A stretch of 64,000 nt of DNA, taken from positions 62,001 through 126,000 of the IMG/VR virus record IMGVR_UViG_3300043570_001980; one strand, written 5' to 3'. A program made the translations under genes and the position numbers. The notes beneath the pieces are model-generated. The model did not search any database and had not been told where the DNA came from. It saw only the letters and a program-made list of their open reading frames with translations. This document shows positions 7,598 to 58,776 of the stretch, in pieces. The first letter of the stretch is position 1. The number at the start of each line of letters is the position of its first letter.

Positions 7598-7607
7598 AAG
7601 GAAACAA

Positions 7608-8195: not shown

Positions 8196-8205
8196 GAGCT
8201 AGATA

Positions 8206-8778: not shown

Positions 8779-8790
8779 AAGGAGTATGTT

Positions 8791-8913: not shown

Positions 8914-8915
8914 AA

Positions 8916-9125
8916 ATGAAAAATGTTATATTTGTAGCAGGTCTATGTTTGGTATTATCCGGTCCATCAGTAGCTGGCGGCGAAATTAAAGAAGTTTGTA
9001 CAGACAAAAAAGACAAAGCCGGTAAAGTCATAAATGGCAAGGACGGCAAACCTGTACAAGAATGCAAGAAAATCAAAGTACACAAGAAATTTGAAGGTGA
9101 AAAAGTTCCTGATGGCAAGAAATAA
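8916..9125 (+). CDS. Small secreted basic protein
   Basis: Signal peptide, two Cys, Lys-rich; aaagga SD. Confidence 0.55.
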   Translation: MKNVIFVAGLCLVLSGPSVAGGEIKEVCTDKKDKAGKVINGKDGKPVQECKKIKVHKKFEGEKVPDGKK

Positions 9126-9968: not shown

Positions 9969-10043
9969 TTTAACCGTACTGCTTGTGTTTTTAACACATT
10001 GAGTTTATAATTAAAAACTATCGAAGTACCCAATAGGAAAACT

Positions 10044-12335: not shown

Positions 12336-13026
12336 AGTAGTTAATTCAAGTCAGCTATACTTTGATCAATTTGAGTATAGGGCTGTGTTTTACCTTCAAG
12401 AGTTGCCTTGTCTACGAAATTTAAAAAATGATCCTGACAAAGATCGTCAGATGATTTCCTGGAATGTGGATCAGCGAAAAAAATTCAAAGATCACCTAAG
12501 ACATGTTAACTGGGGAGGAAGCTGGCACAACCAAAATAGTTCAATACCCATTGGTGATGAAGTAGAACCAAATTTATTGTTGTTTTATGATTTTTATTCT
12601 TCAGAGCCCGACGTTAAAAAACTAGTGATTCAGTCAGGTGGTTACGGGTATCTATACACTAACAATAAAAAATACATACAAGAACTGGCTAGATTACCAT
12701 TTATTAAAAATGTCTACGGGTATCAAATCAATGTAGCGTTTGCAAAAGGAACCATTAGGTTAAAAAATCCAAAGCATTCTTATCGTTTATATTTTAAAGA
12801 TAGAAAAATAACCAAACAACAAAAAAGTTATTTGGTTAATTTCTTAAAGAACCACGAAGGGCAAATAAGACTAGGACCAGCACTTAAACATTGGGTAAAA
12901 AAAGACGAGTACTGTTATTTGTACGGAAACTTTTTTGTAGAATACGATCACCAATCTTTTGTAAGTATGCTTAGTCTTGTGAGTCCAAGCACAGTTAGAA
13001 AGACTGTAACCTTAATAAAAGCATAA
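12295..13026 (+). CDS. Hypothetical protein
   Basis: 243-aa AT-rich ORF filling the gap after clpA. Confidence 0.6.
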   Translation: MDTLSLTNSNPEFEVVNSSQLYFDQFEYRAVFYLQELPCLRNLKNDPDKDRQMISWNVDQRKKFKDHLRHVNWGGSWHNQNSSIPIGDEVEPNLLLFYDFYSSEPDVKKLVIQSGGYGYLYTNNKKYIQELARLPFIKNVYGYQINVAFAKGTIRLKNPKHSYRLYFKDRKITKQQKSYLVNFLKNHEGQIRLGPALKHWVKKDEYCYLYGNFFVEYDHQSFVSMLSLVSPSTVRKTVTLIKA

Positions 13027-13036
13027 ATATATTACC

Positions 13037-14009: not shown

Positions 14010-14023
14010 GCTAAATATAAGGT

Positions 14024-15016
14024 ATGAAAAAACTAGTCATTATGCCCGGTGGTTTCCACCCCTTTCACGCAGGCCATAAAGCTCTGTATGATGCGGCCCA
14101 AGCGGCTTTCCCCAGCGCCGATGTTTACATTGCTGCCACAGCAGACACCTCAACAAGACCTTTTCCTTTTGCAGTCAAGCAAAAGCTGGCAAAATTAGCT
14201 GGCATTCCTGCACACAGATTTATTCAAGTCAAAAATCCTTTCCGTGCCAATGAAATTACACAACATTACGATCCCAGCACTACACAGCTGATTTTTGTAC
14301 GTAGTGAAAAAGATCGTAACGAACAGCCCGTGCCCGGTGGTGTAAAAAAGGATGGTAGTGCTGGCTACTTACAACCATACAAGCGCACAGGCCTACAGCC
14401 AATGACTCAGCATGCTTACATAGCATATTTGCCTGTGGTACAGTTTGGTTCAGGTATGACCAGTGCCACAGAAATTCGTGCCAAATGGCCTGCAATGTCA
14501 CCTGAACAAAAAGCCACATTGGTTAACTCATTATATCCACAGACCCAGGGCAACGAAAAATTAACCAATGTAACAATTAAACTAATTGATGCAGGCATGG
14601 GCAGTGATGTGAAAGAAGCACTACAAGGTCCAGCCTTTGGTGTTGGTGCAGGCGGATTAAATGCAGGAATGCCAATGCCAAATGGTCCAGATAAAGAAGT
14701 TGATGAAGCTACTCTGGTCAATGATCCCGACGAAGGAATTCAAATTCGCCCTACTGGAGGTCTTGGTACCTGGGATGAAGGTAGTCTTAAGCAGAGTTTA
14801 GTACGACAACTGGTTGAGTTAGCAGAAATGCTCAAAGTTGGCAACTATCGCGGAGTGGAACATCTAATGTACAAAGCTGGTGCTATGCAAAGTAAAGTCC
14901 AAGCTCTGGCCCGATTAGAAGATTTTACTGACAAACAAGGAAGACGACCTGTTGCACGTGGGCGAGAAATTGACATTGGCGAAAACAATGACTACGTCAA
15001 TGAAACAAACAAGTAA
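14024..15016 (+). CDS. HxGH cytidylyltransferase-like protein with C-terminal accessory modules
   Basis: IMPGGFHPFHAGH; later DVKE-A and EVDE-A junctions; CTAAATA at 14011. Confidence 0.7.
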   Translation: MKKLVIMPGGFHPFHAGHKALYDAAQAAFPSADVYIAATADTSTRPFPFAVKQKLAKLAGIPAHRFIQVKNPFRANEITQHYDPSTTQLIFVRSEKDRNEQPVPGGVKKDGSAGYLQPYKRTGLQPMTQHAYIAYLPVVQFGSGMTSATEIRAKWPAMSPEQKATLVNSLYPQTQGNEKLTNVTIKLIDAGMGSDVKEALQGPAFGVGAGGLNAGMPMPNGPDKEVDEATLVNDPDEGIQIRPTGGLGTWDEGSLKQSLVRQLVELAEMLKVGNYRGVEHLMYKAGAMQSKVQALARLEDFTDKQGRRPVARGREIDIGENNDYVNETNK

Positions 15017-15217
15017 ACGTCGCGTCTATCCGCCGAAACTACCGGTTAAAGTAGTACAGCACGGATCTCCCAATGTATTAATGACTCCACTAAGAAATTG
15101 CAGTAAGGTAATGCAGTTGGGCATTGGATTAAAAATAGCATCATAAATTTGCCAACAAAAAAATAGCCTGGGTTTTGTACGTAGTTAAATAGAAGTACAT
15201 ATTTTTACGAGGAACAT

Positions 15218-16162: not shown

Positions 16163-16183
16163 TCAAAGCGGTAAATATAGTTT

Positions 16184-18772
16184 ATGAACATTCATGAACT
16201 AGATTCCTATCGTTTAAGCAACGCAATCAAGTTTAACGACAAGTTAAACCCACGCATTTGGGGAGAGGACGAACATCTTCTCCCTGATGTTCGTGACCAC
16301 TTATTGGCAATTGCGGATGACTTTCGCGAATTCCTTGGCCTAACAGACCTTGAACTAAAAGATGTTACAATATCTGGTTCAAACGCCGCCTACACATATA
16401 CACCACACAGCGACATTGATCTACACTTGGTAGTAGATTTACCCAGGGCCGATGCCAGCGACGTTTATCGTGAGCTGTTTGATGCTAAAAAATATCAGTA
16501 CAACGATCAACACAATTTTAAAATTGGCGGTTACGATGTTGAGTTGTATGTACAGAATGCCAATCAACCGCCGGTGAGCCAAGGCGAGTATTCGGTGTTG
16601 AACAATGACTGGCTACAAGTTCCCAAACGTCAACAAGCTGTGGTTGATGACATGAGCACACGTAGCAAGTACGAAGATCTAGGACACAGAATTGAGTCAG
16701 CCATTGCTGATGGTGATAGACAGCGCATGGAGTCGCTGGCTAAAAAGATACGTGAAATGCGCACAACCGGCCTGGCAAAGACTGGAGAATTTGGTCCAGA
16801 AAATCTAGCATTTAAACTGTTGAGAGCCAGTGGCTTGATTGATCGACTGCGTGAAGCCAGACTTGCCGCAAAAGATCATGAACTAAGTTTACAAGAGCGC
16901 AAGAAAAAGAAAGTACGCTACGGATATGGTGGGTACTGGATGCCAGGATTCTCGTTTGGCGACGGCGAGGGCGGCGATGGTGGTGGTGGCGAAAGTGTAC
17001 AAGAAAACACAGAATCCCCAGACATCAATCAAGACATTAGGCAAGTACTACAACCATTCATTGATAGTTGTGTTGAGTATCTTGGAATTGAACAAGCCCC
17101 AAAAATTATATTAAAACGTGACCCAGAATGGACACGTAGAAACGGCACATTTGGTCAATTTGATCCCGAAACACGTTCAGTCACACTGGCAGTGAGTGGC
17201 CGTCATGTGCTAGATATTTTGCGTACTCTAGCACATGAGCTCACACACTCTCGTCAAAACGAACTAGCTGACATGCCCGTGGATGCAGGCGAAACAGGAT
17301 CCCCTTACGAAGACGAAGCCAATGCCAAAGCAGGCCAAATTATGCGACACTGGGTTGATCAGTATCCTGAATTCTTCAAAGATGCGCCACTAGAGGAATC
17401 TTTAAAAGATAAATTGGCTGCCGCTGCCGCTGCCGCTTGCATAGCTGGCACGCCCGGGTGTGCTACCACACAAAGCATGTCCACCGCTGATACATTGAAA
17501 GGTATTCAAACTGTTGGCCGAACTGCACAAACAGTAAAGCAAATGGGTAGCGCAGGCGCAAAAGAAGAATTAATACAACAACTAAAGAATGAACTGCGTA
17601 GACAACGTGGGCAGTTGCCAGAAACAGTCACTGACGAAGATTATGATCCCAACGGAAAACCACCCGGTCCAGAATTCAAACCCACCATGCCAGCAGGCAC
17701 AGTCAAAGTAGATGTCAGCGATGTCTACGATTGGTACAAGCTAGGACAACACATTAGTGATTTAAAAGGGCTGGGTCAGCATGACTTTGGAAGTGGTCCT
17801 CCTAGTACTATTATGGCATTTGGCAGCGAAGAAGAAGAACACAAGTATATCGACGCATTAAAGAAAACAGGATTGACCACAACTGACATTGATCCTGTTG
17901 ACCCCAATCGACCCAAAGGCATGCCTCGCCAGAAGACAGATCCTACATACAATGTCAACGAAGCATTTGATCAACCTTATCCACTACTTCGATGGGAAAA
18001 GGGTGACTTTGGTGATGTAGACGCAATCGCACGATTAGATGACGGAACTTTTCTAAGTATCATGTTCAACAAGGGATTTAGTAAAGATTCAAAAGAGGAA
18101 GCATGGAGTGTTGAGTTTTATAGAAACAACAGCCAAGAAGTCACAGGTGAAGGTGATTCTCAACGAGTATTTGCCACTGTGTTAAGTGCTATACAAACAT
18201 TTATTAAAAAGTACAAGCCTAATAGAATGACCTTTTCGGCCTCAAAAGAAGTTGAACCGGGACAAAACTCACAAAGCAGAGCCAGACTCTACGATAGTTT
18301 GGTTCAGCGTTATGCCAGAGCTTGGGGTTATAGAGCTTTCCGTGCAGATACCGGCAACAAAGTCATCTACGAACTAAGCAGAAGACAACCTGTAGTAGCA
18401 GAAGGTCCATTTGTTCAAAGAATTGTTCATCCTAATAAAATCAACATCTACGTGCGAGCAGGCAAAAAACCCAAACTGGTTGCAACCAATGTGTCTTATA
18501 ATCTATTAGACAAATACATTGACAAAGTGGTAGACAAATATCCACAGTTTAGGCCCACTGATTTTTCTTTTCAATCTGCTGATGAAAAAGTAATAGCAGA
18601 AGCCACCGGATACATTCCTGTCAACGACAAAGAAGCTCGTGATCCACGCTACAGCATGGCCATCACACAAGACATCAAGCCTGGCGAAGTGCAACGTCAA
18701 GCCAAAAAAATGGGCTGGCGCACCACTGCCGCTGGAACACCACCTACATTAAAGACATCAGGAAGAATGTAA
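16184..18772 (+). CDS. Putative head-packaged polyprotein: pol-beta-like nucleotidyltransferase + HEXXH metallopeptidase-like + further modules
   Basis: ISGSNAAY...SDIDLH; TLAHELTH; junctions VQE-N, LEE-S, VNE-A, VAE-G, IAE-A. Confidence 0.7.
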   Translation: MNIHELDSYRLSNAIKFNDKLNPRIWGEDEHLLPDVRDHLLAIADDFREFLGLTDLELKDVTISGSNAAYTYTPHSDIDLHLVVDLPRADASDVYRELFDAKKYQYNDQHNFKIGGYDVELYVQNANQPPVSQGEYSVLNNDWLQVPKRQQAVVDDMSTRSKYEDLGHRIESAIADGDRQRMESLAKKIREMRTTGLAKTGEFGPENLAFKLLRASGLIDRLREARLAAKDHELSLQERKKKKVRYGYGGYWMPGFSFGDGEGGDGGGGESVQENTESPDINQDIRQVLQPFIDSCVEYLGIEQAPKIILKRDPEWTRRNGTFGQFDPETRSVTLAVSGRHVLDILRTLAHELTHSRQNELADMPVDAGETGSPYEDEANAKAGQIMRHWVDQYPEFFKDAPLEESLKDKLAAAAAAACIAGTPGCATTQSMSTADTLKGIQTVGRTAQTVKQMGSAGAKEELIQQLKNELRRQRGQLPETVTDEDYDPNGKPPGPEFKPTMPAGTVKVDVSDVYDWYKLGQHISDLKGLGQHDFGSGPPSTIMAFGSEEEEHKYIDALKKTGLTTTDIDPVDPNRPKGMPRQKTDPTYNVNEAFDQPYPLLRWEKGDFGDVDAIARLDDGTFLSIMFNKGFSKDSKEEAWSVEFYRNNSQEVTGEGDSQRVFATVLSAIQTFIKKYKPNRMTFSASKEVEPGQNSQSRARLYDSLVQRYARAWGYRAFRADTGNKVIYELSRRQPVVAEGPFVQRIVHPNKINIYVRAGKKPKLVATNVSYNLLDKYIDKVVDKYPQFRPTDFSFQSADEKVIAEATGYIPVNDKEARDPRYSMAITQDIKPGEVQRQAKKMGWRTTAAGTPPTLKTSGRM

Positions 18773-20220
18773 TGAGAGCAACAGAGTTTATAGTTGAAAA
18801 CGCAGATCAAGCCGCAGTCAGTGCTTTGCAAAAAAAGCATGGCTGGTCTACGGGCACAACAGTCAATGGAGATCTTTACTTTACTTGGCAAGGGCTTACT
18901 TATGTGTTTTATGGTGAGCGTATGCGTATCAACGTCCCAAACACTGACCGCTCTATATCAGTTGTGTGGGGCAAGAAACCTGATTGGCAAGGCCGAGGCA
19001 ATGATGAAATTAGTTTTGCACAAGCAGTACAACGAAAAATTCTAAAATTTGACTTGTCAATTTGGCAACAATTGGACCGTGGTCAAATCAATGATAATCA
19101 AGCCCTGCAAAAATTCAAGGCCGAAAATGAACGGCAGGCTAGAGAAGCTCTTGCACAGGATACTACGGAAGGTCGAGAAAAGTTTAACCAGGCTGTGATG
19201 AAACCCGGTTTTGAGTTCAGTCAAGAAATCAACGGTGTCACGTATGAAGTAACAAATGATGAGGGCCCGGGTCCTGTGGTCACTGTAACTGACAAGAACA
19301 AAGAAGTAATTGCTCAAGCGGCATTCTGGAAGCACAAAACTCGTCCAGGATTAGAAAGCCTAAACACTTACGTTGAGCCCGAGTGGCAAGGTCAAGGCAT
19401 TGCCGCAAACATGTATGCTGTGATGCGCATGTTGGGTGCTAACATATCACCGTCTACCATTCAAACAGATGACGGCCAGGCCATGTGGGCCAAGTGGAGT
19501 AAACAAGGTGATGCTAAACATCTAAAGAATCTAAATCCCAAAATCAAAGAGCAAACAGTAACAGAAGGCAAGTTGAGTGTGGATGTACCCAACGAAGAAT
19601 GGTTGCAGGACAAGATTGACTATGCCAAGAGCAAAGGGCGTAACAGCTACGGTGTTCCTTACATGGGCAGTACCACTGCTGGGGTTGTTGGAACTCCACC
19701 TAGAGTGCGTGTAATGCGACTAGCTTCGTTGCCTGGTATGCGCAACGAACAAATGAATGTGCGCAAAAATGATCTAAAGTGGTTAATGGATTACATGGAA
19801 CGCACAGGTAAGTTGCCGCCCATGGGCAGTAATCCCAACGAGGAATACCTGCCCTACATCATGGTGGCCTACAATGGTGAAGCCTGGGTCAACGAAGGCA
19901 ATCATCGTATCATGGCTGCCTACAGATTAAACTGGCCCGACATGCCCATTGAAATACGTTACTTTGATGGTGGTGAAAGAATTGAATCAGGGCCAATGGC
20001 TCCGGGAAAGATTGGGCTGGGTACACCAGTGGCAGAATCTCATGAACAATGTCCTGAGTGTGGCGGAGCAATGTTCAGTGAATTAATGATCAACGAAAAA
20101 CAAGATGCCTGTTACTACAAAGTTAAAAGCCGTTACAAAGTATGGCCTAGTGCTTATGCCAGTGGTGCACTGGTGCAATGTCGTAAAAAAGGTGCGGCCA
20201 ATTGGGGGAACAAAAAATGA
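18772..20220 (+). CDS. Putative head-packaged polyprotein: GNAT acetyltransferase + ParB-like domain + Cys module
   Basis: Starts MRATEFIVE; YVEPEWQGQGIA (GNAT motif A); NEGNHRIMAA (ParB-like); junctions VTE-G and VAE-S. Confidence 0.7.
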   Translation: MRATEFIVENADQAAVSALQKKHGWSTGTTVNGDLYFTWQGLTYVFYGERMRINVPNTDRSISVVWGKKPDWQGRGNDEISFAQAVQRKILKFDLSIWQQLDRGQINDNQALQKFKAENERQAREALAQDTTEGREKFNQAVMKPGFEFSQEINGVTYEVTNDEGPGPVVTVTDKNKEVIAQAAFWKHKTRPGLESLNTYVEPEWQGQGIAANMYAVMRMLGANISPSTIQTDDGQAMWAKWSKQGDAKHLKNLNPKIKEQTVTEGKLSVDVPNEEWLQDKIDYAKSKGRNSYGVPYMGSTTAGVVGTPPRVRVMRLASLPGMRNEQMNVRKNDLKWLMDYMERTGKLPPMGSNPNEEYLPYIMVAYNGEAWVNEGNHRIMAAYRLNWPDMPIEIRYFDGGERIESGPMAPGKIGLGTPVAESHEQCPECGGAMFSELMINEKQDACYYKVKSRYKVWPSAYASGALVQCRKKGAANWGNKK

Positions 20221-21731
20221 GATATCGTGAAATATTAGAAGCCTGCTGGAAAGGCTATCACAAAGAAGGCATGAAAACCATGTTTGGCAAACGCTATCCC
20301 AACTGCGTGAAAAATACCAACGAAGAACTAGAAGAAGATCTACGCAAATGGTTCAAAGAGAAGTGGGTGCGTTTTGGTCCAGATGGCAAGATTCGTGGAG
20401 ATTGTGCCAGGGGTGATGATAGTGAAGGCAAGCCAAAATGTTTGCCACAAAGCAAGGCACACGGTCTAGGTAAAAAGGGTCGTGCAAGTGCGGCAAGTCG
20501 TAAGCGCAGACAAGATCCCAATCCAGAGCGTAGTGGTCCAGCAATCAATGTCAACACCAAGAAAAAATCAAACGAAGGTGCAGTTGGAGTTGGTTGGTCT
20601 CACAAGCCCGAAGCAATTGACAAGATTCATTCTTGGCAAAATTCAGAGACAGGTACAGATTCAAGAATGTTTCAGGGTTACAAAATGAAGTTCACTCCCA
20701 ATGGGATGTTTATCTACAAAGGTGGCGATGTGGTACATAAGCAGCCTGGAGATTTTTCAGACCCGACCAATAAAGACATCATGGCGGCTAAGAGAAGAAT
20801 AACAATGTTGATTAATAAAACGCAAGGCGTGGCGGAAGGCTCTGAGCAACAGTACGCCGTTACCATTGACGCAATCAATCACGGTGTGTTGGCACCTGTA
20901 ACAGTTGTTGCCGGCAGTTCAGAAGAAGCAAAACAAAAGGCCATTGCTGGTGTTAAAGCATCAATGATCAAGCGTGGATATGAATTAATGGTGCGTAGTG
21001 TATCAGCCAAGCCCGAACAAGGTGTGGCGGAAAACATGGACCACAGCAAAGATGGTCGCGCTGTGGAAGAACTCAAGGCAGCATTGATAGATCGCAAACA
21101 ACGATTACAGTCTGCCAGTGATGATCAAGTGTACGATAGCATTGACAAGATCATGACACGTATTGCAAAAACTCACAGCATCAGTGGACAGAAACTGCAT
21201 GACCTGTGGGTGGACCGGTACAAACAAGTACCTGATACATGGATCATGAACGAAGATGCCAGTGGTATAGATTTTGACATGCAGTTTGACGATGACACCG
21301 GGTCGTTTGCAACAGTGACCGCTCGAGCACAAGGCCGCACACTAGGTTCGGTCAAGTTCTTTATGGACGGAGATACCTTGGAAGCAGACATGGTAGAAGT
21401 GGATGACCGGTATCGTGGACAAGGCATTGCGGCGGCCATGTATGACTATGCCAAGAGCCAAGGTTATACAATAGAAAAAAGTTCGAATCTAACACCCGAT
21501 GGTGATCACTTCTGGAACAAAAATCGCGGAGAAGAAACTGTTTGGGAACAAGGCATGGCAGAGAACTTTGCCGACGGTAAGAATCCTGGACGCAAAGGCC
21601 TAGCCAAACGTGTGGGTGTGAACTGCAAACAACCTGTTGCCAAACTGCGTAGTATTGCTGCCAATTCATCAGGCGAACGACAACGAATGGCACATTGGTG
21701 TGCCAACATGAAATCAGGAAAGAAAAAATGA
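20217..21731 (+). CDS. Putative head-packaged polyprotein with a GNAT domain and small Cys/basic modules
   Basis: Starts MRYREILE; CWKGY...PNCVK; DLRKWFKEKWV; VEVDDRYRGQGIA; two QGVAE and one QGMAE. Confidence 0.7.
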   Translation: MRYREILEACWKGYHKEGMKTMFGKRYPNCVKNTNEELEEDLRKWFKEKWVRFGPDGKIRGDCARGDDSEGKPKCLPQSKAHGLGKKGRASAASRKRRQDPNPERSGPAINVNTKKKSNEGAVGVGWSHKPEAIDKIHSWQNSETGTDSRMFQGYKMKFTPNGMFIYKGGDVVHKQPGDFSDPTNKDIMAAKRRITMLINKTQGVAEGSEQQYAVTIDAINHGVLAPVTVVAGSSEEAKQKAIAGVKASMIKRGYELMVRSVSAKPEQGVAENMDHSKDGRAVEELKAALIDRKQRLQSASDDQVYDSIDKIMTRIAKTHSISGQKLHDLWVDRYKQVPDTWIMNEDASGIDFDMQFDDDTGSFATVTARAQGRTLGSVKFFMDGDTLEADMVEVDDRYRGQGIAAAMYDYAKSQGYTIEKSSNLTPDGDHFWNKNRGEETVWEQGMAENFADGKNPGRKGLAKRVGVNCKQPVAKLRSIAANSSGERQRMAHWCANMKSGKKK

Positions 21732-22132
21732 GAAATTTTATTAATCTACTGGAAGCTATAGAAAAAGGCTGCCCGCTTGCTACACAAAGCATTGAACTAA
21801 ATTTAAAAAATCGTCAAAAAGCCATAGACGAATACCATTATGGACCTCTCAATCCCAACGAGCCCAACGATGAATATTGGGAAGAATTAGCAGACAAATG
21901 GAACACAAATGACATTAAATCAGTAAAACAAAACCGCTGTGGGAATTGTGCAGCCTTTGACATTTCTGAATCCATGCAAGATTGTATTGCAAAAGGCATT
22001 GGTGAGGAACCAGGGTCAGATCCACACGATACAATAGATGCTGGGCAACTAGGATATTGTAAGTTTTTGAAATTTAAATGTGCCGCCAAACGAACTTGCG
22101 ATGCCTGGGTAGAAGGCGGCCCTGTTACATGA
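21728..22132 (+). CDS. Cys-rich hypothetical protein with an IP-like propeptide
   Basis: MRNFINLLE-A; CGNCAAF, YCKFLKFKC, TCDAW. Confidence 0.6.
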   Translation: MRNFINLLEAIEKGCPLATQSIELNLKNRQKAIDEYHYGPLNPNEPNDEYWEELADKWNTNDIKSVKQNRCGNCAAFDISESMQDCIAKGIGEEPGSDPHDTIDAGQLGYCKFLKFKCAAKRTCDAWVEGGPVT

Positions 22133-22275
22133 AATTTGGTCGTAAAAAATAATGTCAGCATCTTCAAAATCTATTTTATTAGTAGGATGCTTGTTTAGCG
22201 ATTATTGCGGATTTGGAGAGATCATTGGAAATCATAAGTAATCAATAAAGATTGCCTTTGCAAATAGGAAAAAAA

Positions 22276-23769
22276 ATGAGATTTAACGAACTTCAAGAAA
22301 CTACCCTAGGCGGATTTAAAGTAAAACCGTTGCATATTGAGAACACCGGTGTTAGTGAAGAGCTTGAGCATAACTTTGACAAACACATAGTTGCGGTCAC
22401 TGTCAGTGATCCTCACAGTTCAGCTGTGACACAACGTCAAGAACTAAAACAACGCAAGGCCAAGGTACGTGCATTAGATCGTGAATCTGCTGTTAATACT
22501 GCTGTCAATTGGTATCGTAAACAAGGCTACAAAGTACACGATCATCACTACATTGGCACAGATAACGGTATTGCCGAAGGCTCTGTAACTAAAAAGCCGC
22601 AACCCTATAATGACCCCAATTGGTCCAAAAACTTACCTAAAGAAAAATTAGATGCATTGGCTGGACCAAGATATAAAAAAGATAAAAAAGACAAAGGTGT
22701 AGCCGAAGCAATCAAGTTAAATGCGCCACAACGCACAATACCACGTGATGAATTGCAGGGCTATGCTGACCGTATCAAGACTGGCACCAAAACCAAACGT
22801 GACAAGTTTAGCCCTATCATTCACGGCAGCAATATCAAGGCCATTACCAAAGATGATGAGAACACTGAGTGGGACTTGGATGATTTGTCCAAGCAGATTA
22901 CCACACGTCCCCGGGCCATACTTGGCACTAATGCCAAAATGGAAAAGTCTAAAACTGAAGGCGAAATCATTTATGACCTGACATTGCCTGCACTATCAGG
23001 TATTGTTGTGGATGAAGATACTGGCGACTTTGTGGAAATTACCACATGCCCGGGTGCTGGTGCTTGCCAACTATTCTGTTATGCTAGAAAAGGTGGCTAT
23101 GTTATGTTCCCTGCTAGCAGTATGAGTGCGGCGCAGGCACTAAACTTCCTGGTCAATGACCCTGAAGGTTATACTGCCAGAGTCAATCAAGAAATCAAAA
23201 CAATCAAAGCCAAAACAGACAAAGCTGGTGTACAGTTAGTTGTTCGTTGGCACGATGCTGGTGATTTCTTCTCCAAGGAGTATTTGGATCTAGCATATGG
23301 TGTTGCCCAATCCAATCCTGATGTGCAGTTTTATGCCTACACCAAGATGGGCGATGTTGCCACAGGTGCCGCACCTGCTAACTTTACCATGAACTTTTCA
23401 TCAGGCAGCAAGCGTGGTGAAGAAAAGAAAGTGGAATTCTACAAACAACAAAACCCTGGTGCCACAGTCAAGCAAGGTGTTACTGTTCCCAAGGACATGT
23501 TCTTTGATCTAATTGCACGTAAAGGCACTAGCTTGATCAAAGACGCCAAGGGTCGCACACAATTTGCCAGCCCCGAAGCACTTGACACATTTAAGCAACG
23601 TATTGCACAACAGTACAAGGTTGCTCCTGATTCAATTATTACCTACGATCAAATGCTAGCAACTCCAGTGGGCACAGAGCCCAAGTGGAATGTTATTGTA
23701 CAACCGGGTGCTGGTGACCGTGCAGCCAATCGCAAGGATGTAATTGACAGTTACTTGATGTTCCACTGA
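22276..23769 (+). CDS. Putative head-packaged polyprotein with a C-terminal Gp88-like domain
   Basis: MRFNELQE-T; GIAE-G and GVAE-A junctions; TCPGAGAC..FCYA, VRWHDAGDF, FYAYTK. Confidence 0.6.
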   Translation: MRFNELQETTLGGFKVKPLHIENTGVSEELEHNFDKHIVAVTVSDPHSSAVTQRQELKQRKAKVRALDRESAVNTAVNWYRKQGYKVHDHHYIGTDNGIAEGSVTKKPQPYNDPNWSKNLPKEKLDALAGPRYKKDKKDKGVAEAIKLNAPQRTIPRDELQGYADRIKTGTKTKRDKFSPIIHGSNIKAITKDDENTEWDLDDLSKQITTRPRAILGTNAKMEKSKTEGEIIYDLTLPALSGIVVDEDTGDFVEITTCPGAGACQLFCYARKGGYVMFPASSMSAAQALNFLVNDPEGYTARVNQEIKTIKAKTDKAGVQLVVRWHDAGDFFSKEYLDLAYGVAQSNPDVQFYAYTKMGDVATGAAPANFTMNFSSGSKRGEEKKVEFYKQQNPGATVKQGVTVPKDMFFDLIARKGTSLIKDAKGRTQFASPEALDTFKQRIAQQYKVAPDSIITYDQMLATPVGTEPKWNVIVQPGAGDRAANRKDVIDSYLMFH

Positions 23770-23770
23770 T

Positions 23771-23971
23771 ATGCGCTACAACGAAATCAAGCCTGTTAAA
23801 ACCAAGATGAAAACCTATGTTGTAAAGATAAAATTACAGCAAACAGGCTACACCAATATCATCGACACCACAGTGATGGCTCGCACACCAGAAATGGCTC
23901 GTAGACTACTCCGACAACAATACAACAACAAGCATGTGGTTGTTGGACAGCCAAAAGAACTCAAAGTTTAG
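23771..23971 (+). CDS. Small basic hypothetical protein
   Basis: MRYNEI start; coupled to the upstream gene. Confidence 0.55.
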   Translation: MRYNEIKPVKTKMKTYVVKIKLQQTGYTNIIDTTVMARTPEMARRLLRQQYNNKHVVVGQPKELKV

Positions 23972-23998
23972 TTCAGTTAACGCCCAACTAAATACTGG

Positions 23999-24298
23999 GT
24001 GAAAAAACAATTTGTAAAAGCTTTTTTTGATTTACATTGCGACTGGCAAGGATTACCACCTTCCTATCGAATCTACGTCAACGATGAATTATTTGCTGAA
24101 CGTACATTCTATTGGGAAAATGAATACCTAAAAGAAATACTGCAAATAGAAGCACCGGCAGGAATGTACACAGTTAAGTTTGAGCCGCTAAAGCCCAACT
24201 TGGCCACGTTCCAGATGGAAAATTATGGAATTGAACACGGATCGGCTCGCTGGGTTGATCAACAAACCTTGGAGATTATATTCGATGCGACTACGTGA
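23999..24298 (+). CDS. Hypothetical protein
   Basis: GTG start 5 nt after CTAAATA (23988). Confidence 0.5.
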   Translation: MKKQFVKAFFDLHCDWQGLPPSYRIYVNDELFAERTFYWENEYLKEILQIEAPAGMYTVKFEPLKPNLATFQMENYGIEHGSARWVDQQTLEIIFDATT

Positions 24299-24452
24299 AA
24301 TAACTGAAAGTATGGGCGGCACATGCTCAGGCGGTATTGCTACTGTGGCTCAACCAATGGGCGAAGTGATAACTAGGACTAAGAGTACTAAACCGGCTAA
24401 ATATGCTAATAGCGCACAAAAAATGGTGCCTGTAAAACCTAGGAAAAAATAA
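24285..24452 (+). CDS. Small basic protein with an IP-like propeptide
   Basis: MRLREITE-S start at ATG 24285. Confidence 0.55.
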   Translation: MRLREITESMGGTCSGGIATVAQPMGEVITRTKSTKPAKYANSAQKMVPVKPRKK

Positions 24453-24892
24453 TGTTATCGGACGATTTAAAGACCTTGCTGGCCACACAATATGCTTTGA
24501 GTATCAAAGCACAGAATTTTCACTGGAATGTGGAAGGTCCTGACTTTGCTCAATACCACGACTTCTTTGCCAACTTCTATGAAGAGGTTTACAGCGCAGT
24601 TGATCGAATCGCTGAATACATTCGCACCTTGCAAGAATACAGCCCGGGAAGTTTTGAGCGTTTTCAAGAACTGTCTATTATACAAGGACAAACAAAGATC
24701 CCACGTGCTCGATTGATGATTGAAGAATTGCTGTCAGACAACGGCGCCCTAATTGATCTGTTGAATCAGACATTTGTCAGTGCTGAACAAGAAAACAACC
24801 AGGGCATTGCCAACTTCATTGCTGAACGCTTGGACGCACAGGCCAAGCATGGCTGGATGCTGAGAAGTTTCTTAAAAGGCGACCGGGCATGA
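24452..24892 (+). CDS. dps: Dps / DNA-binding ferritin-like protein
   Basis: KAQNFHWNVEGPDF..HDFF...Y...D.IAEYIR, and C-terminal KHGWML. Confidence 0.92.
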   Translation: MLSDDLKTLLATQYALSIKAQNFHWNVEGPDFAQYHDFFANFYEEVYSAVDRIAEYIRTLQEYSPGSFERFQELSIIQGQTKIPRARLMIEELLSDNGALIDLLNQTFVSAEQENNQGIANFIAERLDAQAKHGWMLRSFLKGDRA

Positions 24893-25482
24893 GCGATTTA
24901 AAAGATATTTTAGCAAAGCTAGATAAAATTGCCGAGGGAGACATTACTCCCGTGAATGTTAAATCTGGACTTAATAAACAACAAAGGCGAGTACCTGAAC
25001 TTCCTGCGCTGTTCAAGCCAAGAAGTATCAATGTATTAACCAATAAAACCGATCCTGAGCATCCTACCAAGGGATACTTTGTTGGCTCAGAAAGTGTTGA
25101 ACAAGACGAAGATCAAGAAACCATCGCCGAAGTGGTCACATCCGAAGATGTAGTCAGCACAGTGAAGAAAAAACTAGGCGATTACCTAGCTGACCTTTCA
25201 AAAGAAATCAAGTCAGACTCTGATCTCAAGGACAAGATTCCACAAGAAGTTGATCAAATTGGTTCTTCAGTTAGAACTATTACCACAGACGACGGTCAAG
25301 AAATTAAAATCCACGGCAACGAGGATGATGGTTTCAGAATTACAATTAAAAACAAACCACATAGTGCAAAGTTTGAATCACTCAAACATGCCGAGATGGC
25401 CTGCGAAATGTACTGCTCACGTCGTAGAGCACGTACTATGGAAACTTCACAGGCCACACCTGATTACCTGGATGAAGCATAA
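24889..25482 (+). CDS. Hypothetical acidic protein, putative head-packaged
   Basis: KIAE-G, TIAE-V, ends YLDEA. Confidence 0.55.
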   Translation: MSDLKDILAKLDKIAEGDITPVNVKSGLNKQQRRVPELPALFKPRSINVLTNKTDPEHPTKGYFVGSESVEQDEDQETIAEVVTSEDVVSTVKKKLGDYLADLSKEIKSDSDLKDKIPQEVDQIGSSVRTITTDDGQEIKIHGNEDDGFRITIKNKPHSAKFESLKHAEMACEMYCSRRRARTMETSQATPDYLDEA

Positions 25483-27164
25483 TGAATCTCAATAACTTAT
25501 TCGAAGCTGCCAACCCGGCGCAACAAGCTGCCATTGCTATAGCAAAGAAAAAAGCTGGTGAAAAACCCAAGAACAAAGGCCTGACTGAATTTGCTCCACC
25601 CGGTGGGAACAACGGTGATTCGGGACGCTGGTACACAGATGACGAGCTGGCAGACATCATTGGTGATGATTGGTTTGAAGATTTTGATGTCAGCAACGAT
25701 GGATTTAACATTGATGCATACGGCGAAAAGGCCAAGAAGAATTTAGTGGGCTATGCCAACTCATGGTTTGATGACAAAGGTTACAATGTTAACGTAATGG
25801 GTGTAGAACATAATGATGTTGACCATGATTTAAAATGGTACATTGTTGGTAGTTTCCAGAATGATAATTTTGCAGGTAAAGATGTAGACGAAGGCTTGGG
25901 TTCCAAGTTAGCTGGATTAGGTCTTGCTGGAGCAATGGCTCTTGGCTCAGCAGGCGCCAATGCCAGAGTTACTCCTGATGGCCAAGGCGGTTTCACTGGC
26001 GGGCTAAAGCCAAGTACAACAGTGACAGCACCTGCTGATAATAAACCGGCCGCAGAAGCACCAAAAGGATTTAGCAAAGAATATCTACAAAAGGCAGCAG
26101 ACCCAAATAGATTTGGTAGATACATGATCAGTGTTGAAAAAGCACAAGAATTGCTGAAGAACATGCAAGAAGCTGTAGCGGAAGGTTCACAGCGAGTTGA
26201 TTCACTTGTGACCGACGCACTAAAAATAATGCAGGGTTCAGACGTAAATGATGCTGTACGAGCTCTAAAGACTGTGCTTGGAGATAGAGAATACAACGGC
26301 CGCCGTGGTCATTACAATTTCTATGTTCGACAACTGATGGATATGTATGGCCAGCAAGGTGTAACAGAAGCTGGTTACAGAAACTACGATGACAATCGCA
26401 CAGGTTTTGGTAAGAATTCACAAGCATATCGTGCTGATGGTGGTGCCAACGATGAAGATCACGAAAGCGATCGTCGCCGTGAACAACAAGTGCAGTCCGG
26501 TACATGGTACATTCGTCTCAATGGAAAAATCATCAAAGACAAACAAGGCAATCCTTATTCATTCCGCGGTAAGGCTGCCGCAAACAAAGCCGCACTAACA
26601 ATGCAGGCTAAACTGTTCAATCAGGGCAAAGAGTTTATGTTGACTACCAATCCCAACGATAACCCTCAAGGTGTGGCGGAAGGCTGGAAAGATGTTGTTG
26701 CAGGTAGTGCAATGGCATTAAGTTCACTAGGTGTTGGCGCTCAAACAATGCCAAGCATGAATGGTCAACAAGTAGAATTAGCAAACAAATATTTTCAGGT
26801 CTTAGTGCAACGAGCAAAAGAAGATGGTAGAGAATTAGACACAAGAACATTGAATGTGTTGAAGGCAAAGGCACAAGATGCGGCTGCACAAAAGATGCAA
26901 CAATCTAAGAAATCACAAACTAATTTTCCAAGTCAAGGCAGTGAGCGTAGAGTTTCTAAAGATATAGGTACTTTTGAATCGCAAGGCGTGGCAGAAGGCC
27001 CTGCTGTAGACGCATACATGGCAGGCAAGAGTCCGGCACTGGCTCACTTTGCTGATCAACTAGATAAGAGTACTGAAGTAAATTTTCAGAAAAACAAAGG
27101 TGTAGCGGAAGGTCAACGAAGCGGCTACGGTCGCGGCTACGCTAGTTATAAATCCAGCAAGTAA
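25482..27164 (+). CDS. Putative head-packaged polyprotein with multiple GVAE junctions and internal signal-peptide-like segments
   Basis: MNLNNLFE-A; GLTE-F, VDE-G, AVAE-G, QGVTE-A, two QGVAE-G, KGVAE-G. Confidence 0.7.
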   Translation: MNLNNLFEAANPAQQAAIAIAKKKAGEKPKNKGLTEFAPPGGNNGDSGRWYTDDELADIIGDDWFEDFDVSNDGFNIDAYGEKAKKNLVGYANSWFDDKGYNVNVMGVEHNDVDHDLKWYIVGSFQNDNFAGKDVDEGLGSKLAGLGLAGAMALGSAGANARVTPDGQGGFTGGLKPSTTVTAPADNKPAAEAPKGFSKEYLQKAADPNRFGRYMISVEKAQELLKNMQEAVAEGSQRVDSLVTDALKIMQGSDVNDAVRALKTVLGDREYNGRRGHYNFYVRQLMDMYGQQGVTEAGYRNYDDNRTGFGKNSQAYRADGGANDEDHESDRRREQQVQSGTWYIRLNGKIIKDKQGNPYSFRGKAAANKAALTMQAKLFNQGKEFMLTTNPNDNPQGVAEGWKDVVAGSAMALSSLGVGAQTMPSMNGQQVELANKYFQVLVQRAKEDGRELDTRTLNVLKAKAQDAAAQKMQQSKKSQTNFPSQGSERRVSKDIGTFESQGVAEGPAVDAYMAGKSPALAHFADQLDKSTEVNFQKNKGVAEGQRSGYGRGYASYKSSK

Positions 27165-27168: not shown

Positions 27169-27249
27169 ATGCAAAACAACGAGTACCCAGTGTATCCTGA
27201 ACAAGAGGGCGAATGGGATCGCCCTCTCAATCCCCACAGCCCAGTATAA
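27169..27249 (+). CDS. Putative 26-aa micropeptide
   Basis: MQNNEYPVYPEQEGEWDRPLNPHSPV, directly after the 25482..27164 stop. Confidence 0.4.
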   Translation: MQNNEYPVYPEQEGEWDRPLNPHSPV

Positions 27250-28786: not shown

Positions 28787-29380
28787 ATGGCATTAGTACC
28801 AATGGTGCTGGAACAAACCAGCAAAGGTGAGCGTAGCTATGATATCTATAGCCGCTTGTTACGTGACCGTGTGATTTTACTTGAAGGTGAAGTACATGAT
28901 CAAATGGCAAATCTAATTGTTGCTCAACTACTATTTCTCGAGAGCGAAAACCCAGACAAAGATATCAGTATGTACATCAACAGCCCTGGAGGTAGTGTCA
29001 CTGCTGGTATGGCTATCTATGATACCATGCAGTTTATTAAACCCGATGTTAATACCATTGTAATGGGACAAGCATGTAGCATGGGAAGTTTGTTGGCACA
29101 ATCGGGTGCCAAAGGCAAGCGCATGATCCTGCCTAATGCACGACACATGATACACCAACCTAGTGGTGGCGCTCGTGGCATGCAAAGCGATATCGAAATT
29201 AGCTACAAAGAAATTACCTATTTGAAGAAACGTTTAACTGAAATTTATGTCAAGCACAACTCAACGGGTAAAACTTTTGAACAGCTAACTGAAGATATGG
29301 ATCGTGACAAGTTTATGTCAGCAGAGGAATCAGTTAATTACGGTCTTGCCGACAAAGTGATAACTACACGTGATATTTAA
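28787..29380 (+). CDS. clpP: ATP-dependent Clp protease proteolytic subunit
   Basis: [23 protein letters not shown] (catalytic Ser), MIHQP, DRD. Confidence 0.95.
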
Positions 29381-58772: not shown

Positions 58773-58776
58773 TTGA

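What the first reader, a model, noticed from the sequence alone, without database searches (positions are those of the whole stretch)
16184..27164. Polyprotein cargo system: (Q/K)GVAE-G junctions separate swappable effector modules
Seen: more than 20 [V/I/L/M]-x-E junctions at domain borders (VQE-N, LEE-S, VNE-A, VAE-G, IAE-A, VTE-G, VAE-S, QGVAE-G/N, QGMAE-N, GIAE-G, KGVAE-A/G, VDE-G, QGVTE-A). They delimit NTase, HEXXH, GNAT, ParB-like, Gp88-like and 20-90 aa modules. Known: T4-type head proteases cut after (I/L)-x-E, and phage polyvalent proteins (Iyer et al. 2017) combine such domains for early host conflict. Inference: each gene is a string of effectors released by the maturation protease inside the capsid. 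This is the best candidate for an undescribed system here.
Basis: partly seen in the sequence, partly recalled or inferred. Interest (0 to 1): 0.85.

Follow-up and report, generated by a model that had tools for sequence, protein, structure and literature searches.

The report
Phage cargo polyproteins with a fixed joint
An uncultivated giant T4-type phage strings its probable capsid-delivered enzymes into long proteins joined by one short linker (QGVAEG), which looks like a head-protease cut site, is kept as a near-fixed 18-base DNA word, and is where related phages swap modules.

Summary

**What the region is.** Window 16184-27164 (probably starting at 14024) is a co-oriented gene cluster in a Rak2/Phosso-like jumbo myovirus. 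It is preceded by T4-late-promoter-like elements.

**What the genes encode.** They encode chains of modules:
- an ANT-like nucleotidyltransferase
- an M78-like zincin
- GNATs
- a ParB/Srx-like domain
- GP88
- small Cys-rich basic modules

**The joints.** Modules are separated by disordered joints ending in hydrophobic-x-Glu, typically (K/Q)GVAE|G.
- G[VIM][AT]E occurs 9 times in the cluster against 0.33 expected.
- Generic [VILM]xE is not enriched.
- In about 270 related contigs, GVAE is the most frequent 4-mer of these proteins.
- DNA homology between phages ends at the joints 12-16 times more often than expected.

**Evidence for packaging and cutting.** Five genes start with a T4 capsid-targeting-like leader (MRATEFIVE against T4 MKTYQEFIAE). 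Related genomes carry a gp21-type prohead protease. A cyanophage protein built from the same mini-modules was found in virions. Packaging and cutting by the head protease is therefore the best reading, but it is inferred.

**Not foreseen.** The joint is kept as one DNA word, CAAGGTGTGGCGGAAGGC. Its rare GCG codon is used at 75-85% of sites against 8% elsewhere. No protease requirement explains this; I read it as an in-frame recombination joint.

**Verdict.** A new variant of polyvalent or internal-protein systems. Interest 0.72.

The parts
14024..15016 (+). gA: NMNAT/cytidylyltransferase-like protein with a C-terminal extension containing VKE|A and VDE|A. It is a probable first member of the cargo cluster, and TAAATA lies 6 nt upstream of its ATG (14010-14017).
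   Evidence: The phrog_3041 match is weak. In L028 a homologue is fused to the small Cys-rich modules. NMNAT-like proteins are repeatedly found in cyanophage virions (PMC9602691). Promoter-like element.
16170..16177 (+). GGTAAATA, a T4-late-promoter-like element 6 nt upstream of the g1 ATG, with no Shine-Dalgarno sequence.
   Evidence: The same (G/A)(G/A)TAAATA lies 3-9 nt upstream of the ATG of g1 homologues in about 36 different contigs, often just after a terminator hairpin. Portal genes of the clade carry CTATAAATA.
16184..18772 (+). g1, 862 aa. Its parts are an ANT-like nucleotidyltransferase (1-236), a Gly-rich linker, an M78/IrrE-like HEXXH zincin (284-399), a low-confidence helical part (406-593), a DUF6934/GNAT-like domain (596-735) and two small C-terminal modules.
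   Evidence: Homologues range from 449 to 1876 aa.
16886..18604 (+). The joints of g1: SLQE|R 16886-16900, SVQE|N 16994-17008, PLEE|S 17387-17401, NVNE|A 17951-17965, VVAE|G 18392-18406 and VIAE|A 18590-18604.
   Evidence: Five of the six lie in pLDDT<50 linkers; SLQE237 sits at the edge of the first one. Homology breakpoints.
18772..20220 (+). g2, 482 aa. It starts with the leader MRATEFIVE (18772-18798) and contains a GNAT (weak match), a ParB/Srx-like module and a C-terminal Cys-rich 'WPSAYASG' module. Its joints are TVTE|G 19555-19569 and PVAE|S 20026-20040.
20217..21731 (+). g3, 504 aa. It starts with the leader MRYREILE (20217-20240) and contains Cys-rich modules A and B, two small modules, a GNAT (354-424 numbering) and a basic C-terminal module. 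One joint is KSNE|G 20565-20579.
20823..20840 (+). 18-nt joint word in g3 (QGVAE|G), 1 mismatch to the consensus.
21018..21035 (+). 18-nt joint word in g3 (QGVAE|N), 2 mismatches. DNA homology to L006 starts right after it.
21549..21566 (+). Joint in g3 (QGMAE|N). DNA homology to L006 starts right after it.
21728..22132 (+). g4, 134 aa, a single Cys-rich module behind the leader MRNFINLLE (21728-21754).
22276..23769 (+). g5, 497 aa. It starts with the leader MRFNELQE (22276-22299). Two small modules are closed by NGIAE|G (22564-22581) and KGVAE|A (22693-22710), followed by a GP88 domain.
   Evidence: PF17338, E 2e-32. The GP88 module aligns to L006 starting exactly at the KGVAE word.
23771..23971 (+). 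g5b, 66 aa, starting MRYNEI, a single small module.
24452..24892 (+). Dps/ferritin-like gene inside the cluster, translationally coupled to g8. It has no leader and no joint, so its membership is uncertain.
   Evidence: PF00210, E 5.6e-23. The genes overlap.
24889..25482 (+). g8, 197 aa, with KIAE|G at residues 13-17 (24925-24939). It matches no known family.
25482..27164 (+). g9, 560 aa, matching no known family. It starts with the leader MNLNNLFE (25482-25505) and consists of seven modules of 16-137 aa.
25881..27113 (+). The joints of g9: DVDE|G 25881-25895, AVAE|G 26172-26186, QGVTE|A 26355-26372, QGVAE|G 26667-26684 (exact consensus), QGVAE|G 26982-26999 and KGVAE|G 27096-27113.
   Evidence: Breakpoints. 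In L006 two of these modules are in the reverse order and one sits in another gene.

Best explanation
**What it is.** The region is a late-expressed cluster of polyvalent cargo genes in a T4-superfamily jumbo phage.

- Each gene encodes a chain of independently folding modules. These are enzymes (an ANT-like nucleotidyltransferase, an M78-like zincin, GNATs, a ParB/Srx-like domain, GP88) and many small basic or helical modules.
- The modules are joined by short disordered linkers that end in hydrophobic-x-Glu. The standard joint is (K/Q)-Q-G-V-A-E|G.
- Most genes begin with an 8-9 residue leader of the type M-R-x-x-E-F-I-x-E. This resembles the T4 capsid targeting sequence.

**Most likely mechanism (inferred).**
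1. The leader takes the chain into the prohead core.
2. The gp21-type prohead protease cuts after Glu, at the leader and at exposed joints.
3. The released modules stay in the head.
4. They enter the cell with the DNA and act early against the host.

**Second layer (pattern shown, mechanism inferred).**
- The standard joint is maintained as one 18-nt DNA word.
- It is the preferred end point of DNA homology between related phages.
- It therefore also serves as an in-frame recombination joint, through which modules are deleted, duplicated, permuted and moved between genes and genomes.
For: **Shown.**
- Motif enrichment in the window.
- GVAE is the most frequent 4-mer in 322 dereplicated family members: 6.6 per 10,000 residues, against 0.95 in other ORFs of the same loci. 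Its flanks are unrelated: 233 distinct upstream and 247 distinct downstream contexts among 257 sites.
- The joints lie in low-confidence linkers between confident domains.
- Protein and DNA homology ends at the joints. Of the interior blastn ends, 585 lie within 12 nt of a joint against 37 expected. Locally, 684 of 1791 ends fall in the 0-19 nt bin against about 58 per bin further out. 254 of 479 joints carry a breakpoint.
- A worked example: against L006, modules are reordered and transposed with ends on the joint words (protein view).
- Nucleotide constraint. 65 of 109 GVAE sites read GGTGTGGCGGAA. GCG is used at 75% of these 109 sites (85% in the QGVAEG subset), against 8% generally. Third-position identity is 0.80 between sites with unrelated flanks, against 0.39 expected. 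Invariant peptides inside modules show normal synonymous scatter.
- The exact 18-mer occurs in more than 120 IMG/VR stretches, against about chance level in 596 Gb of cellular genomes.

**Supporting the protease and packaging step.**
- In sites found by DNA similarity, the Glu codon is the least changed. Val changes to Met, Leu or Ile, and Ala to Thr or Ser.
- This matches T4, where CTS residues 8 and 10 govern processing and Asp at position 10 blocks it (PMC9026906).
- Unrelated modules A-D are always preceded by hxE, whether they are internal or follow an N-terminal leader.
- The leader MRAxEF[IVL]xE starts 131 ORFs of the loci and is never internal in 373,000 residues. The T4 CTS is MKTYQEFIAE.
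- A T4-type late-promoter-like element lies upstream of g1 in about 36 phages.
- A gp21 homologue with the conserved His and Ser motifs is present in Phosso and in the clade. Contigs 3300017917_002374 and 3300047558_000137 hold the protease together with a g1 homologue and the exact joint word respectively.
- Capsid protein propeptides of the clade carry LLE|S, LLE|G and YLxE|TATAG sites like T4.
- In L302, a gene with these joints follows the capsid gene.
- S-SCSM1 gp29, built from the same mini-modules, and NMNAT-like proteins were detected in virions by mass spectrometry.
Against: - No experiment shows packaging or cleavage. No cultured phage carries the GVAE chains.
- The protease of the window's own contig was not retrieved; it did not make the top 80.
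- Known gp21-type proteases remove N-terminal propeptides. T4 internal proteins are cut once (PMC8442874). In SPN3US, every identified substrate cleavage yields an N-terminal propeptide; the only exception is the protease's own self-cleavage (PMC10052503).
- Generic hxE is neither enriched nor depleted in these proteins. There is therefore no sign of selection against internal sites.
- Head-gene loci of the clade almost never contain the motif: 21 hits in 468,000 aa. The capsid propeptide sites are not of the GVAE type.
- The nucleotide-level constraint is not needed for a protease site. It could mean that the peptide is partly a by-product of a DNA or RNA signal.
- g1 starts with its conserved NTase domain and not with an obvious removable leader.
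Confidence: 0.5

Rival explanations
1. **Uncut polyvalent proteins.** The joints are only flexible linkers and recombination micro-homology. The chains work as intact multi-domain proteins, packaged or not, and the hxE ending is incidental to the DNA word.
For: - The nucleotide-level conservation and the concentration of DNA breakpoints at the word need no protease.
- Generic hxE is neither enriched nor depleted.
- Some polyvalent proteins are packaged unprocessed, such as N4 vRNAP (PMC5512222).
Against: - Second codon positions and the Glu codon are the most conserved, and substitutions are conservative (V to M/L/I, A to T/S). This is a protein-level pattern.
- Joints without nucleotide constraint ([EQ]LDE, VNE, LEE) still end in hxE just before each module.
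- The same modules occur behind an N-terminal T4-CTS-like leader that ends in hxE.
Confidence: 0.25
2. **Self-processing.** The M78/IrrE-like zincin carried by g1 cuts the chains in cis or in trans, not the prohead protease. This is the MPTase model proposed for polyvalent proteins.
For: - The NTase-zincin core (1-399) is the conserved head of the first gene in all relatives.
- Iyer et al. 2017 propose this role for the zincin domain (PMC5512222).
- Atlas look-alikes show this zincin fused to various enzymes in phage proteins.
Against: - Cutting after Glu with a hydrophobic residue at P3 is the documented signature of gp21-type serine proteases (PMC9026906), not of zincins. From general knowledge, zincins usually select on P1'.
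- The joint motif is also found in contigs and genes with no zincin in cis.
- Family assignment of the zincin rests on leads only (Pfam E 0.014; Atlas score 0.96).
Confidence: 0.1
3. **The 18-nt word works as RNA or DNA.** It could be an mRNA processing or pausing site, an internal start (the Val codon is GTG, often replaced by ATG), a two-tetrad G-quadruplex, or the target of a dedicated nuclease or recombinase. On this reading the modules are made or moved by that route.
For: - Strong synonymous constraint that is independent of the flanks.
- The word is always on the coding strand and in one frame.
- The pattern GG-TGT-GG-C-GG-AA-GG fits a two-tetrad G4. It would explain the choice of GTG and GCG and the Gly after Glu (read from the sequence).
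- Met (ATG) is the commonest replacement of Val.
Against: - There is no start-compatible Shine-Dalgarno spacing, and 21% of sites use GTA.
- The anti-SD pairing energy is average among the 1024 synonymous versions, and the word has no self-structure.
- G4 does not explain CAA (never CAG), GAA (rarely GAG) or GGT.
- Sub-words are not enriched outside the joint.
- No recombinase or nuclease gene is conserved next to the cluster.
Confidence: 0.1
4. **Chance or composition.** hxE tripeptides are common, and the pattern is read into ordinary multi-domain proteins.
For: Generic [VILM]xE is at the level expected by chance.
Against: - The extended motif occurs 9 times against 0.33 expected, and the 18-mer 5 times against 0.05.
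- It is the top k-mer of the family.
- Breakpoints are 12-16-fold enriched at the joints.
Confidence: 0.01

Closest known systems
T4 internal proteins IPI/IPII/IPIII and Alt: capsid targeting sequence plus gp21 processing
   Same: - A short N-terminal leader ending in hydrophobic-x-Glu: EF-I-x-E here, as in MKTYQEFIAE.
- Otherwise unrelated cargo proteins share only that leader.
- Late expression, a T4-type prohead protease in the genome, and a presumed role after ejection.
- The genes lie away from the head gene block.
   Different: - T4 internal proteins are single products cut once (PMC8442874). Here chains of up to about 1900 aa carry up to ten internal sites.
- The internal joint has an extended consensus (QGVAEG) and a fixed DNA word.
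- Nothing has been tested experimentally.
Polyvalent proteins of phages and conjugative elements (Iyer et al. 2017, PMC5512222)
   Same: - Many unrelated conflict-type domains in one polypeptide: zincin, GNAT, ParB-like, nucleotidyltransferase.
- Encoded by portal-terminase phages.
- Proposed delivery with the DNA, and proposed processing into units.
   Different: - That work proposes cutting by the protein's own zincin. It describes no conserved joint: the word 'linker' does not occur in its text.
- Here a defined joint peptide and DNA word marks every border, and its signature is that of the head protease.
Ejection and inner-body proteins of phiKZ-like giant phages (phiKZ, 201phi2-1, SPN3US), processed by a gp21-related protease
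   Same: - Cleavage after Glu following a short motif.
- Several sites per substrate, and large amounts of packaged protein.
- In SPN3US gp47, a transmembrane segment lies right after the cut (PMC5694885). Compare the hydrophobic segments after the joints in g1 and g9.
   Different: - In those phages the multiple cuts fragment N-terminal propeptides that are discarded (PMC10052503).
- Their motif is (A/S/G)-x-E.
- They are a different phage lineage, and no module shuffling at the sites has been reported.
Cassette borders of polymorphic toxins (VENN-type pre-toxin motifs of CDI/Rhs) and promoter-stem-loop cassettes that mediate shuffling in T4-type genomes. Both are recalled from general knowledge and were not tested here.
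   Same: A short conserved border element marks where variable modules are exchanged by recombination. In CDI and Rhs it lies at or near the point where the toxin is released.
   Different: - Those systems have one border per protein, or lie between genes.
- Here the border is repeated many times in frame inside one ORF, in a phage.
Polyproteins of RNA viruses, cut at short consensus sites by a viral protease
   Same: One translation product is divided into functional units at a repeated short site in flexible linkers.
   Different: - In RNA viruses, polyproteins are the means of gene expression and have a fixed content.
- Here the content is highly variable and accessory, the genome is DNA with ordinary genes, and processing is unproven.

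Membership tests
T4-type CTS-bearing internal (ejection) proteins | An N-terminal capsid targeting sequence of about 10-19 residues ending in (L/I)-x-E | tested here: met
   - g2 starts MRATEFIVE, g3 MRYREILE, g4 MRNFINLLE, g5 MRFNELQE and g9 MNLNNLFE.
- The strict leader pattern matches only cluster genes among 83 window ORFs.
- It starts 131 ORFs in related loci and is never internal.
- This is sequence resemblance only. g1, gA, gB and Dps lack the leader.
T4-type CTS-bearing internal (ejection) proteins | The phage encodes a gp21-type prohead serine protease | tested here: met
   - Phosso has a homologue, 33% identical to T4 gp21, E 4e-18, with the GE.DHP and GVSSRG motifs.
- Clade homologues are found in hundreds of contigs. 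One (3300017917_002374) also holds a g1 homologue, and another (3300047558_000137) holds the exact joint word.
- The window's own contig was not sampled outside the window.
T4-type CTS-bearing internal (ejection) proteins | Late transcription | tested here: inconclusive
   A conserved TAAATA element lies 3-9 nt upstream of the g1 ATG in about 36 contigs, and upstream of gA and gB. It resembles the T4 late promoter TATAAATA (general knowledge) and the portal upstream regions of the clade. No transcript data exist.
T4-type CTS-bearing internal (ejection) proteins | The protein is present in the virion and cut after the Glu | not testable with these tools
   There is only indirect support. S-SCSM1 gp29, made of modules A, B and C, and NMNAT-like proteins were detected in cyanophage virions by mass spectrometry.
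Polyvalent proteins (Iyer et al. 2017) | Two to fifteen unrelated conflict-type domains in one polypeptide of a phage or conjugative element | tested here: met
   - g1: NTase, zincin, GNAT-like domain and small modules.
- g2: GNAT, ParB/Srx-like domain and a Cys-rich module.
- g3: mini-modules and a GNAT.
- g5: GP88.

Polyvalent proteins (Iyer et al. 2017) | Presence of the zincin-like MPTase domain | tested here: inconclusive
   A HEXXH domain occupies g1 284-399. Pfam gives only sub-threshold hits (DUF6782, a putative metallopeptidase, E 0.014). ESM Atlas points to M78/IrrE-like and SprT-like clusters at 0.96. Identity with the MPTase family as defined in the paper was not tested.
Polyvalent proteins (Iyer et al. 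2017) | Genomic context of late or virion genes | tested here: inconclusive
   The cluster lies among replication and chaperone genes, with the DNA polymerase 2 kb downstream. Head genes are absent from all 194 polyprotein loci. One exception is L302, where such a gene follows the capsid gene.
Site-specific cassette systems (integron-like or shufflon-like) | A dedicated recombinase or nuclease next to the repeated sites | tested here: not met
   No integrase, invertase or nuclease gene was recognised in the window cluster or conserved beside it. Only the repeated word itself is present. The finding is therefore not filed here; the resemblance is functional only.

The most novel reading that the evidence does not exclude
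The 18-nt word CAAGGTGTGGCGGAAGGC is a dual-use element. As peptide (QGVAE|G) it is the cut site that releases cargo modules in the capsid. As DNA it is a selected, possibly factor-recognised, in-frame exchange site.

On this reading the jumbo phages run a cassette system inside open reading frames. Effector modules are the mobile units. They spread among genes and genomes through the joints, which makes the system a protein-level counterpart of integron cassettes or of toxin-tip exchange.
Probability: 0.25. Interest if true: 0.85.

Novelty: new variant of a known kind. Interest (0 to 1): 0.72.

Why it matters
**What it would show, if the reading holds.**
- T4-type phages can scale the 'one leader, one cargo' logic of internal proteins up to chains of ten or more cargo units. 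A single targeting signal would load the whole chain, and the head protease would separate the units.
- It would give a simple sequence rule for predicting the mature products of hundreds of unannotated jumbo-phage proteins.
- The fixed DNA word at the joints is a rare case where the physical site of module shuffling can be read directly. That makes the evolution of phage counter-defence repertoires testable.

**Practical uses.**
- The leader plus joint could serve as a design for loading several proteins into T4-like capsids.
- The many 45-180 aa modules between joints are a catalogue of candidate early-acting host-takeover or anti-defence factors.

Tried and rejected
1. **Generic [VILM]xE as evidence.** It is not enriched in the window (48 against 40.8 +- 5.5) or in the family, so it was dropped as an argument.
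2. **Depletion of hxE inside modules** as a sign of protease exposure. No such depletion exists in the large set.
3. **The joint as a Shine-Dalgarno mimic, or as SD avoidance.** The consensus ranks 706 of 1024 synonymous versions for anti-SD pairing and forms no hairpin.
4. **Internal start codon.** The spacing is wrong and 21% of sites use GTA.
5. **A Chi-like genome-wide signal.** Sub-words occur at chance frequency outside the joint, and cellular genomes hold the word at about chance level.
6. **Recent common descent as the cause of the fixed codons.** Third-position identity stays near 0.8 whether the flanks are unrelated, saturated or nearly identical.
7. **Single-sequence AlphaFold of g3.** Mean pLDDT was 46, so it was uninformative.
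8. **Cultured relatives.** No megablast hit for the region and no tblastn hit for g9 or the L354 chain. Only single modules turn up in cyanophages and in Maribacter and other phages.
9. **Retrieving the protease of the window's own contig.** Contigs holding both features were used instead.
10. **Head genes in the polyprotein loci.** None were found.
11. **GVAE chains in the 156 head loci.** None with two or more strict motifs.
12. **Literature.** A full-text search for the peptide found no phage paper.

Full report
**Setting**

The window is a 64-kb piece of a 342-kb IMG/VR contig, 3300043570_001980. Almost all its genes are on the + strand.
- Its family-B DNA polymerase is 51% identical to that of Sinorhizobium phage Phosso. 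It is 42-46% identical to Atu_ph07, XaC1, Serratia BF and other Rak2-like jumbo myoviruses.
- The window also encodes DnaJ, a ClpA/B-like ATPase, ClpP and GroES/GroEL.
- According to Iyer et al. 2021, this group of jumbo phages uses a T4 gp21-type prohead protease (PMC7824862).

**Anatomy**

The true gene starts are g1 16184, g2 18772, g3 20217, g4 21728, g5 22276, g5b 23771, Dps 24452, g8 24889 and g9 25482. Most overlap by 1-4 nt.

The recognisable domains are:

| Domain | Where | Evidence |
|---|---|---|
| ANT-like nucleotidyltransferase | head of g1 | phrog_36119, E 1.6e-40; weak fold matches to aminoglycoside nucleotidyltransferases; stand-alone homologues in cultured phages end at residue 236-237 |
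| HEXXH zincin | g1 | M78/IrrE-like by ESM Atlas |
| DUF6934 region with a GNAT-like fold | g1 | fold search, |
| GNAT | g2 (weak) and g3 | Pfam, |
| ParB/Srx-like module | g2 | Atlas lead |
| GP88 | g5 | PF17338, E 2e-32 |

 g8 and g9 match no family. The upstream NMNAT-like gene gA (14024-15016) probably belongs to the cluster, because a homologue in L028 is fused to the same small modules.

**The observation**

All the listed junction strings are present.
- G[VIM][AT]E occurs 9 times in the cluster against 0.33 expected (maximum 4 in 5000 shuffles). It occurs twice in the rest of the window's proteins and never in non-coding frames.
- Generic [VILM]xE is not enriched (48 against 40.8 +- 5.5), so the count of 'more than 20' carries no weight as a count.
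- The position of the sites does carry weight. In the AlphaFold model of g1 (29-sequence alignment, mean pLDDT 64.8), the confident domains are 6-236, 284-399, 596-735, 750-796 and 809-855. All five joints fall in the pLDDT<50 linkers between them.

**Relatives**

Three protein-seeded scans and one scan with the DNA word brought in about 270 loci.
- g1 homologues range from 449 to 1876 aa.
- An unbiased k-mer census of 322 dereplicated family members puts GVAE first among 4-mers, and QGVAE and GVAEG first among 5-mers. They rank ahead of the words from the best-conserved modules.
- The logo from 257 distinct sites is [KQE]-[Q>E,K]-G-[V>L,M,I]-[A>T,S]-E|[G>A,D,E,N]. The flanks are essentially unrelated.
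- Contigs such as L354, L337, L286 and L330 carry strings of 45-180 aa modules separated by (K)QGVAE|G.

Module borders in relatives coincide with the motifs.
- Protein homology ends cluster at the joints.
- Interior ends of blastn matches lie within 12 nt of a joint 585 times against 37 expected (maximum 55 in 200 trials).
- Within 400 nt of a joint, 684 of 1791 ends fall in the first 20 nt, against about 58 per 20-nt bin beyond.
- 254 of 479 joints carry a breakpoint.
- In the pairwise map against L006 (70-90% nt identity), nearly every match starts or stops on a joint.
  - The g9 module 26668-26995 sits in another gene, behind g3 module 1.
  - The g9 modules 26170-26370 and 26412-26682 are in the reverse order.
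  - The GP88 module starts exactly at the KGVAE word (protein view).

**Evidence for packaging and cutting**

1. *Leaders.* g2, g3, g4, g5 and g9 start with MRATEFIVE, MRYREILE, MRNFINLLE, MRFNELQE and MNLNNLFE. The T4 capsid targeting sequence is MKTYQEFIAE (PMC8442874). A strict leader pattern starts 131 ORFs in the related loci and is never internal in 373,000 residues.
2. *Equivalence of leader and joint.* Four unrelated small modules are always preceded by hxE, whether they follow such a leader or an internal joint.
3. *Substitution pattern.* In sites found by DNA similarity alone, the Glu codon is the least changed. Val is replaced by Met, Leu or Ile, and Ala by Thr or Ser, while the flanking residues vary freely. 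In T4, residues 8 and 10 of the CTS govern processing, and Asp at position 10 blocks it (PMC9026906).
4. *Late expression.* (G/A)(G/A)TAAATA lies 3-9 nt upstream of the g1 ATG in about 36 contigs, often after a terminator hairpin and without a Shine-Dalgarno sequence. Portal genes of the clade have CTATAAATA.
5. *Protease.*
   - Phosso has a gp21 homologue with the conserved His and Ser motifs, and the clade has hundreds.
   - Contig 3300017917_002374 also carries a g1 homologue. Contig 3300047558_000137 also carries the exact word.
   - Capsid propeptides of the clade contain LLE|S, LLE|G and YLxE|TATAG.
   - In L302 a gene with QGITE|A, QGVAE|G, AVAE|G and GMAE|A joints follows the capsid gene.
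6. *Virion data.* Cyanophage S-SCSM1 gp29 is made of the same mini-modules, and its 'virion protein' label comes from mass spectrometry. NMNAT-like proteins recur in cyanophage virions.

**The unforeseen layer**

The joint is conserved as DNA.
- 65 of 109 GVAE sites read GGTGTGGCGGAA. At the 109 GVAE sites, Ala is GCG in 75% (85% in the QGVAEG subset), against 8% elsewhere. Val is GTG in 75% against 25%, and Gly is GGT in 95% against 41%.
- Controls behave normally. Invariant peptides inside modules (SAYASG, KWFKEKW) and the other joint type ([EQ]LDE) show ordinary synonymous scatter.
- The 12-mer occurs 86 distinct times in the first 194 loci, always on the coding strand and in frame.
- Third-position identity in the four codons is 0.80 between sites with unrelated flanks. 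It is 0.88 where homologous flanks are synonymously saturated at 0.39. Codon usage predicts 0.39.
It occurs 56 times in 596 Gb of cellular genomes, mostly as single hits in high-GC actinomycetes.
- The constraint is not explained by anti-SD pairing, by a hairpin or by a genome-wide signal. A two-tetrad G-quadruplex pattern explains some codons but not all of them.

**Interpretation**

Shown:
- A family of modular phage proteins exists.
- A conserved joint peptide sits in disordered linkers.
- Modules are exchanged at the joints.
- The standard joint is under nucleotide-level constraint.

Inferred:
- Capsid targeting by the leader.
- Cutting by the gp21-type protease.
- Ejection with the DNA.
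- Use of the DNA word as micro-homology or as a recognised exchange site.

The main rival keeps the chains uncut. Next comes self-processing by the zincin, then an RNA or DNA mechanism.

**Novelty**

I found no description of the joint or of such chains in the searchable literature. The closest known systems are the T4 internal proteins and the polyvalent proteins of Iyer et al. This cluster differs from them in three ways: the multiplicity of internal sites, the extended consensus, and the fixed DNA word.

Noticed in passing
window 17399-17479; 25893-25970; 26682-26750: Directly after three joints come segments that look like signal peptides. g1 406-432 has Lys-Asp-Lys, an Ala run and then Cys, which is lipobox-like. 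g9 138-163 ends in Ala-Asn-Ala. g9 401-423 is Gly/Ala-rich and hydrophobic. If the joints are cut, these segments would become N-terminal export or membrane-insertion signals.
   Followed up: no
window 13020-13036, 14010-14017, 15186-15193, 16170-16177, 23990-23996, 58767-58774: TAAATA-type late-promoter-like elements. Four lie only 4-7 nt from the ATG with no Shine-Dalgarno sequence, which suggests leaderless late mRNAs. GroES has a perfect TATAAATA 26 nt upstream.
   Followed up: partly
window 9177-12335, 28787-29380, 58799-60753: The phage has its own proteostasis set: DnaJ, a ClpA/B-like ATPase (phrog_4871, E 1e-238), ClpP, GroES and GroEL (phrog_5725, E 4e-175).
   Followed up: no
window 6793-9125: A run of four small genes with lipoprotein or secretory signal peptides. 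Two of the N-termini end in Ala-Cys or Gly-Cys.
   Followed up: no
window 24452-24892: A Dps/ferritin-like gene is embedded in the cargo cluster and translationally coupled to g8. It may be a packaged DNA-protecting protein, or it may be unrelated.
   Followed up: no
L302:1855-9937: A 10-kb contig carries, in order: portal, acidic core protein, gp21-type protease, scaffold, capsid protein, a GIY-YIG-like ORF (7870-8592), and then a chain with GVAE-type joints that runs off the contig end.
   Followed up: partly
L079:2215-3768 (S-SCSM1 gp29) and L080:1604-3085 (S-8S53): T4-like cyanophages have proteins of about 500 aa assembled from the same two-Cys basic mini-modules (CWxGY..PNCV, KWF..PKC, DACYxKVKSRY..WPSAYASG), but without the GVAE word. 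No Pfam model above threshold covers these modules.
   Followed up: partly
L330 (two ORFs): One 47-aa helical module occurs in two different ORFs of the same contig, each time between QGVAE|G joints. This looks like an intragenomic copy made through the joints.
   Followed up: no
g1 residues 276-405 (window 17009-17398): ESM-Atlas structural neighbours show this small zincin fused in other phage proteins to superoxide dismutase, NTP_transf_2, CTP_transf_like and NT5C domains. An 'enzyme plus zincin' pairing therefore seems common in phages.
   Followed up: no
window 27205-27226: A GC-rich perfect hairpin lies 40 nt after the g9 stop, followed about 20 nt later by TATAAAT. It is a possible end of the transcription unit. 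The terminator scan did not list it because it has no T-run.
   Followed up: no
L199:28361-33249 (Phosso head region): The cultured phage Phosso has small ORFs between its portal and capsid genes that start MRYNEFSKE and MRASELFE. This is the same leader type as in the window's cargo genes. Its gp21 homologue is annotated as 'scaffolding protein'.
   Followed up: partly
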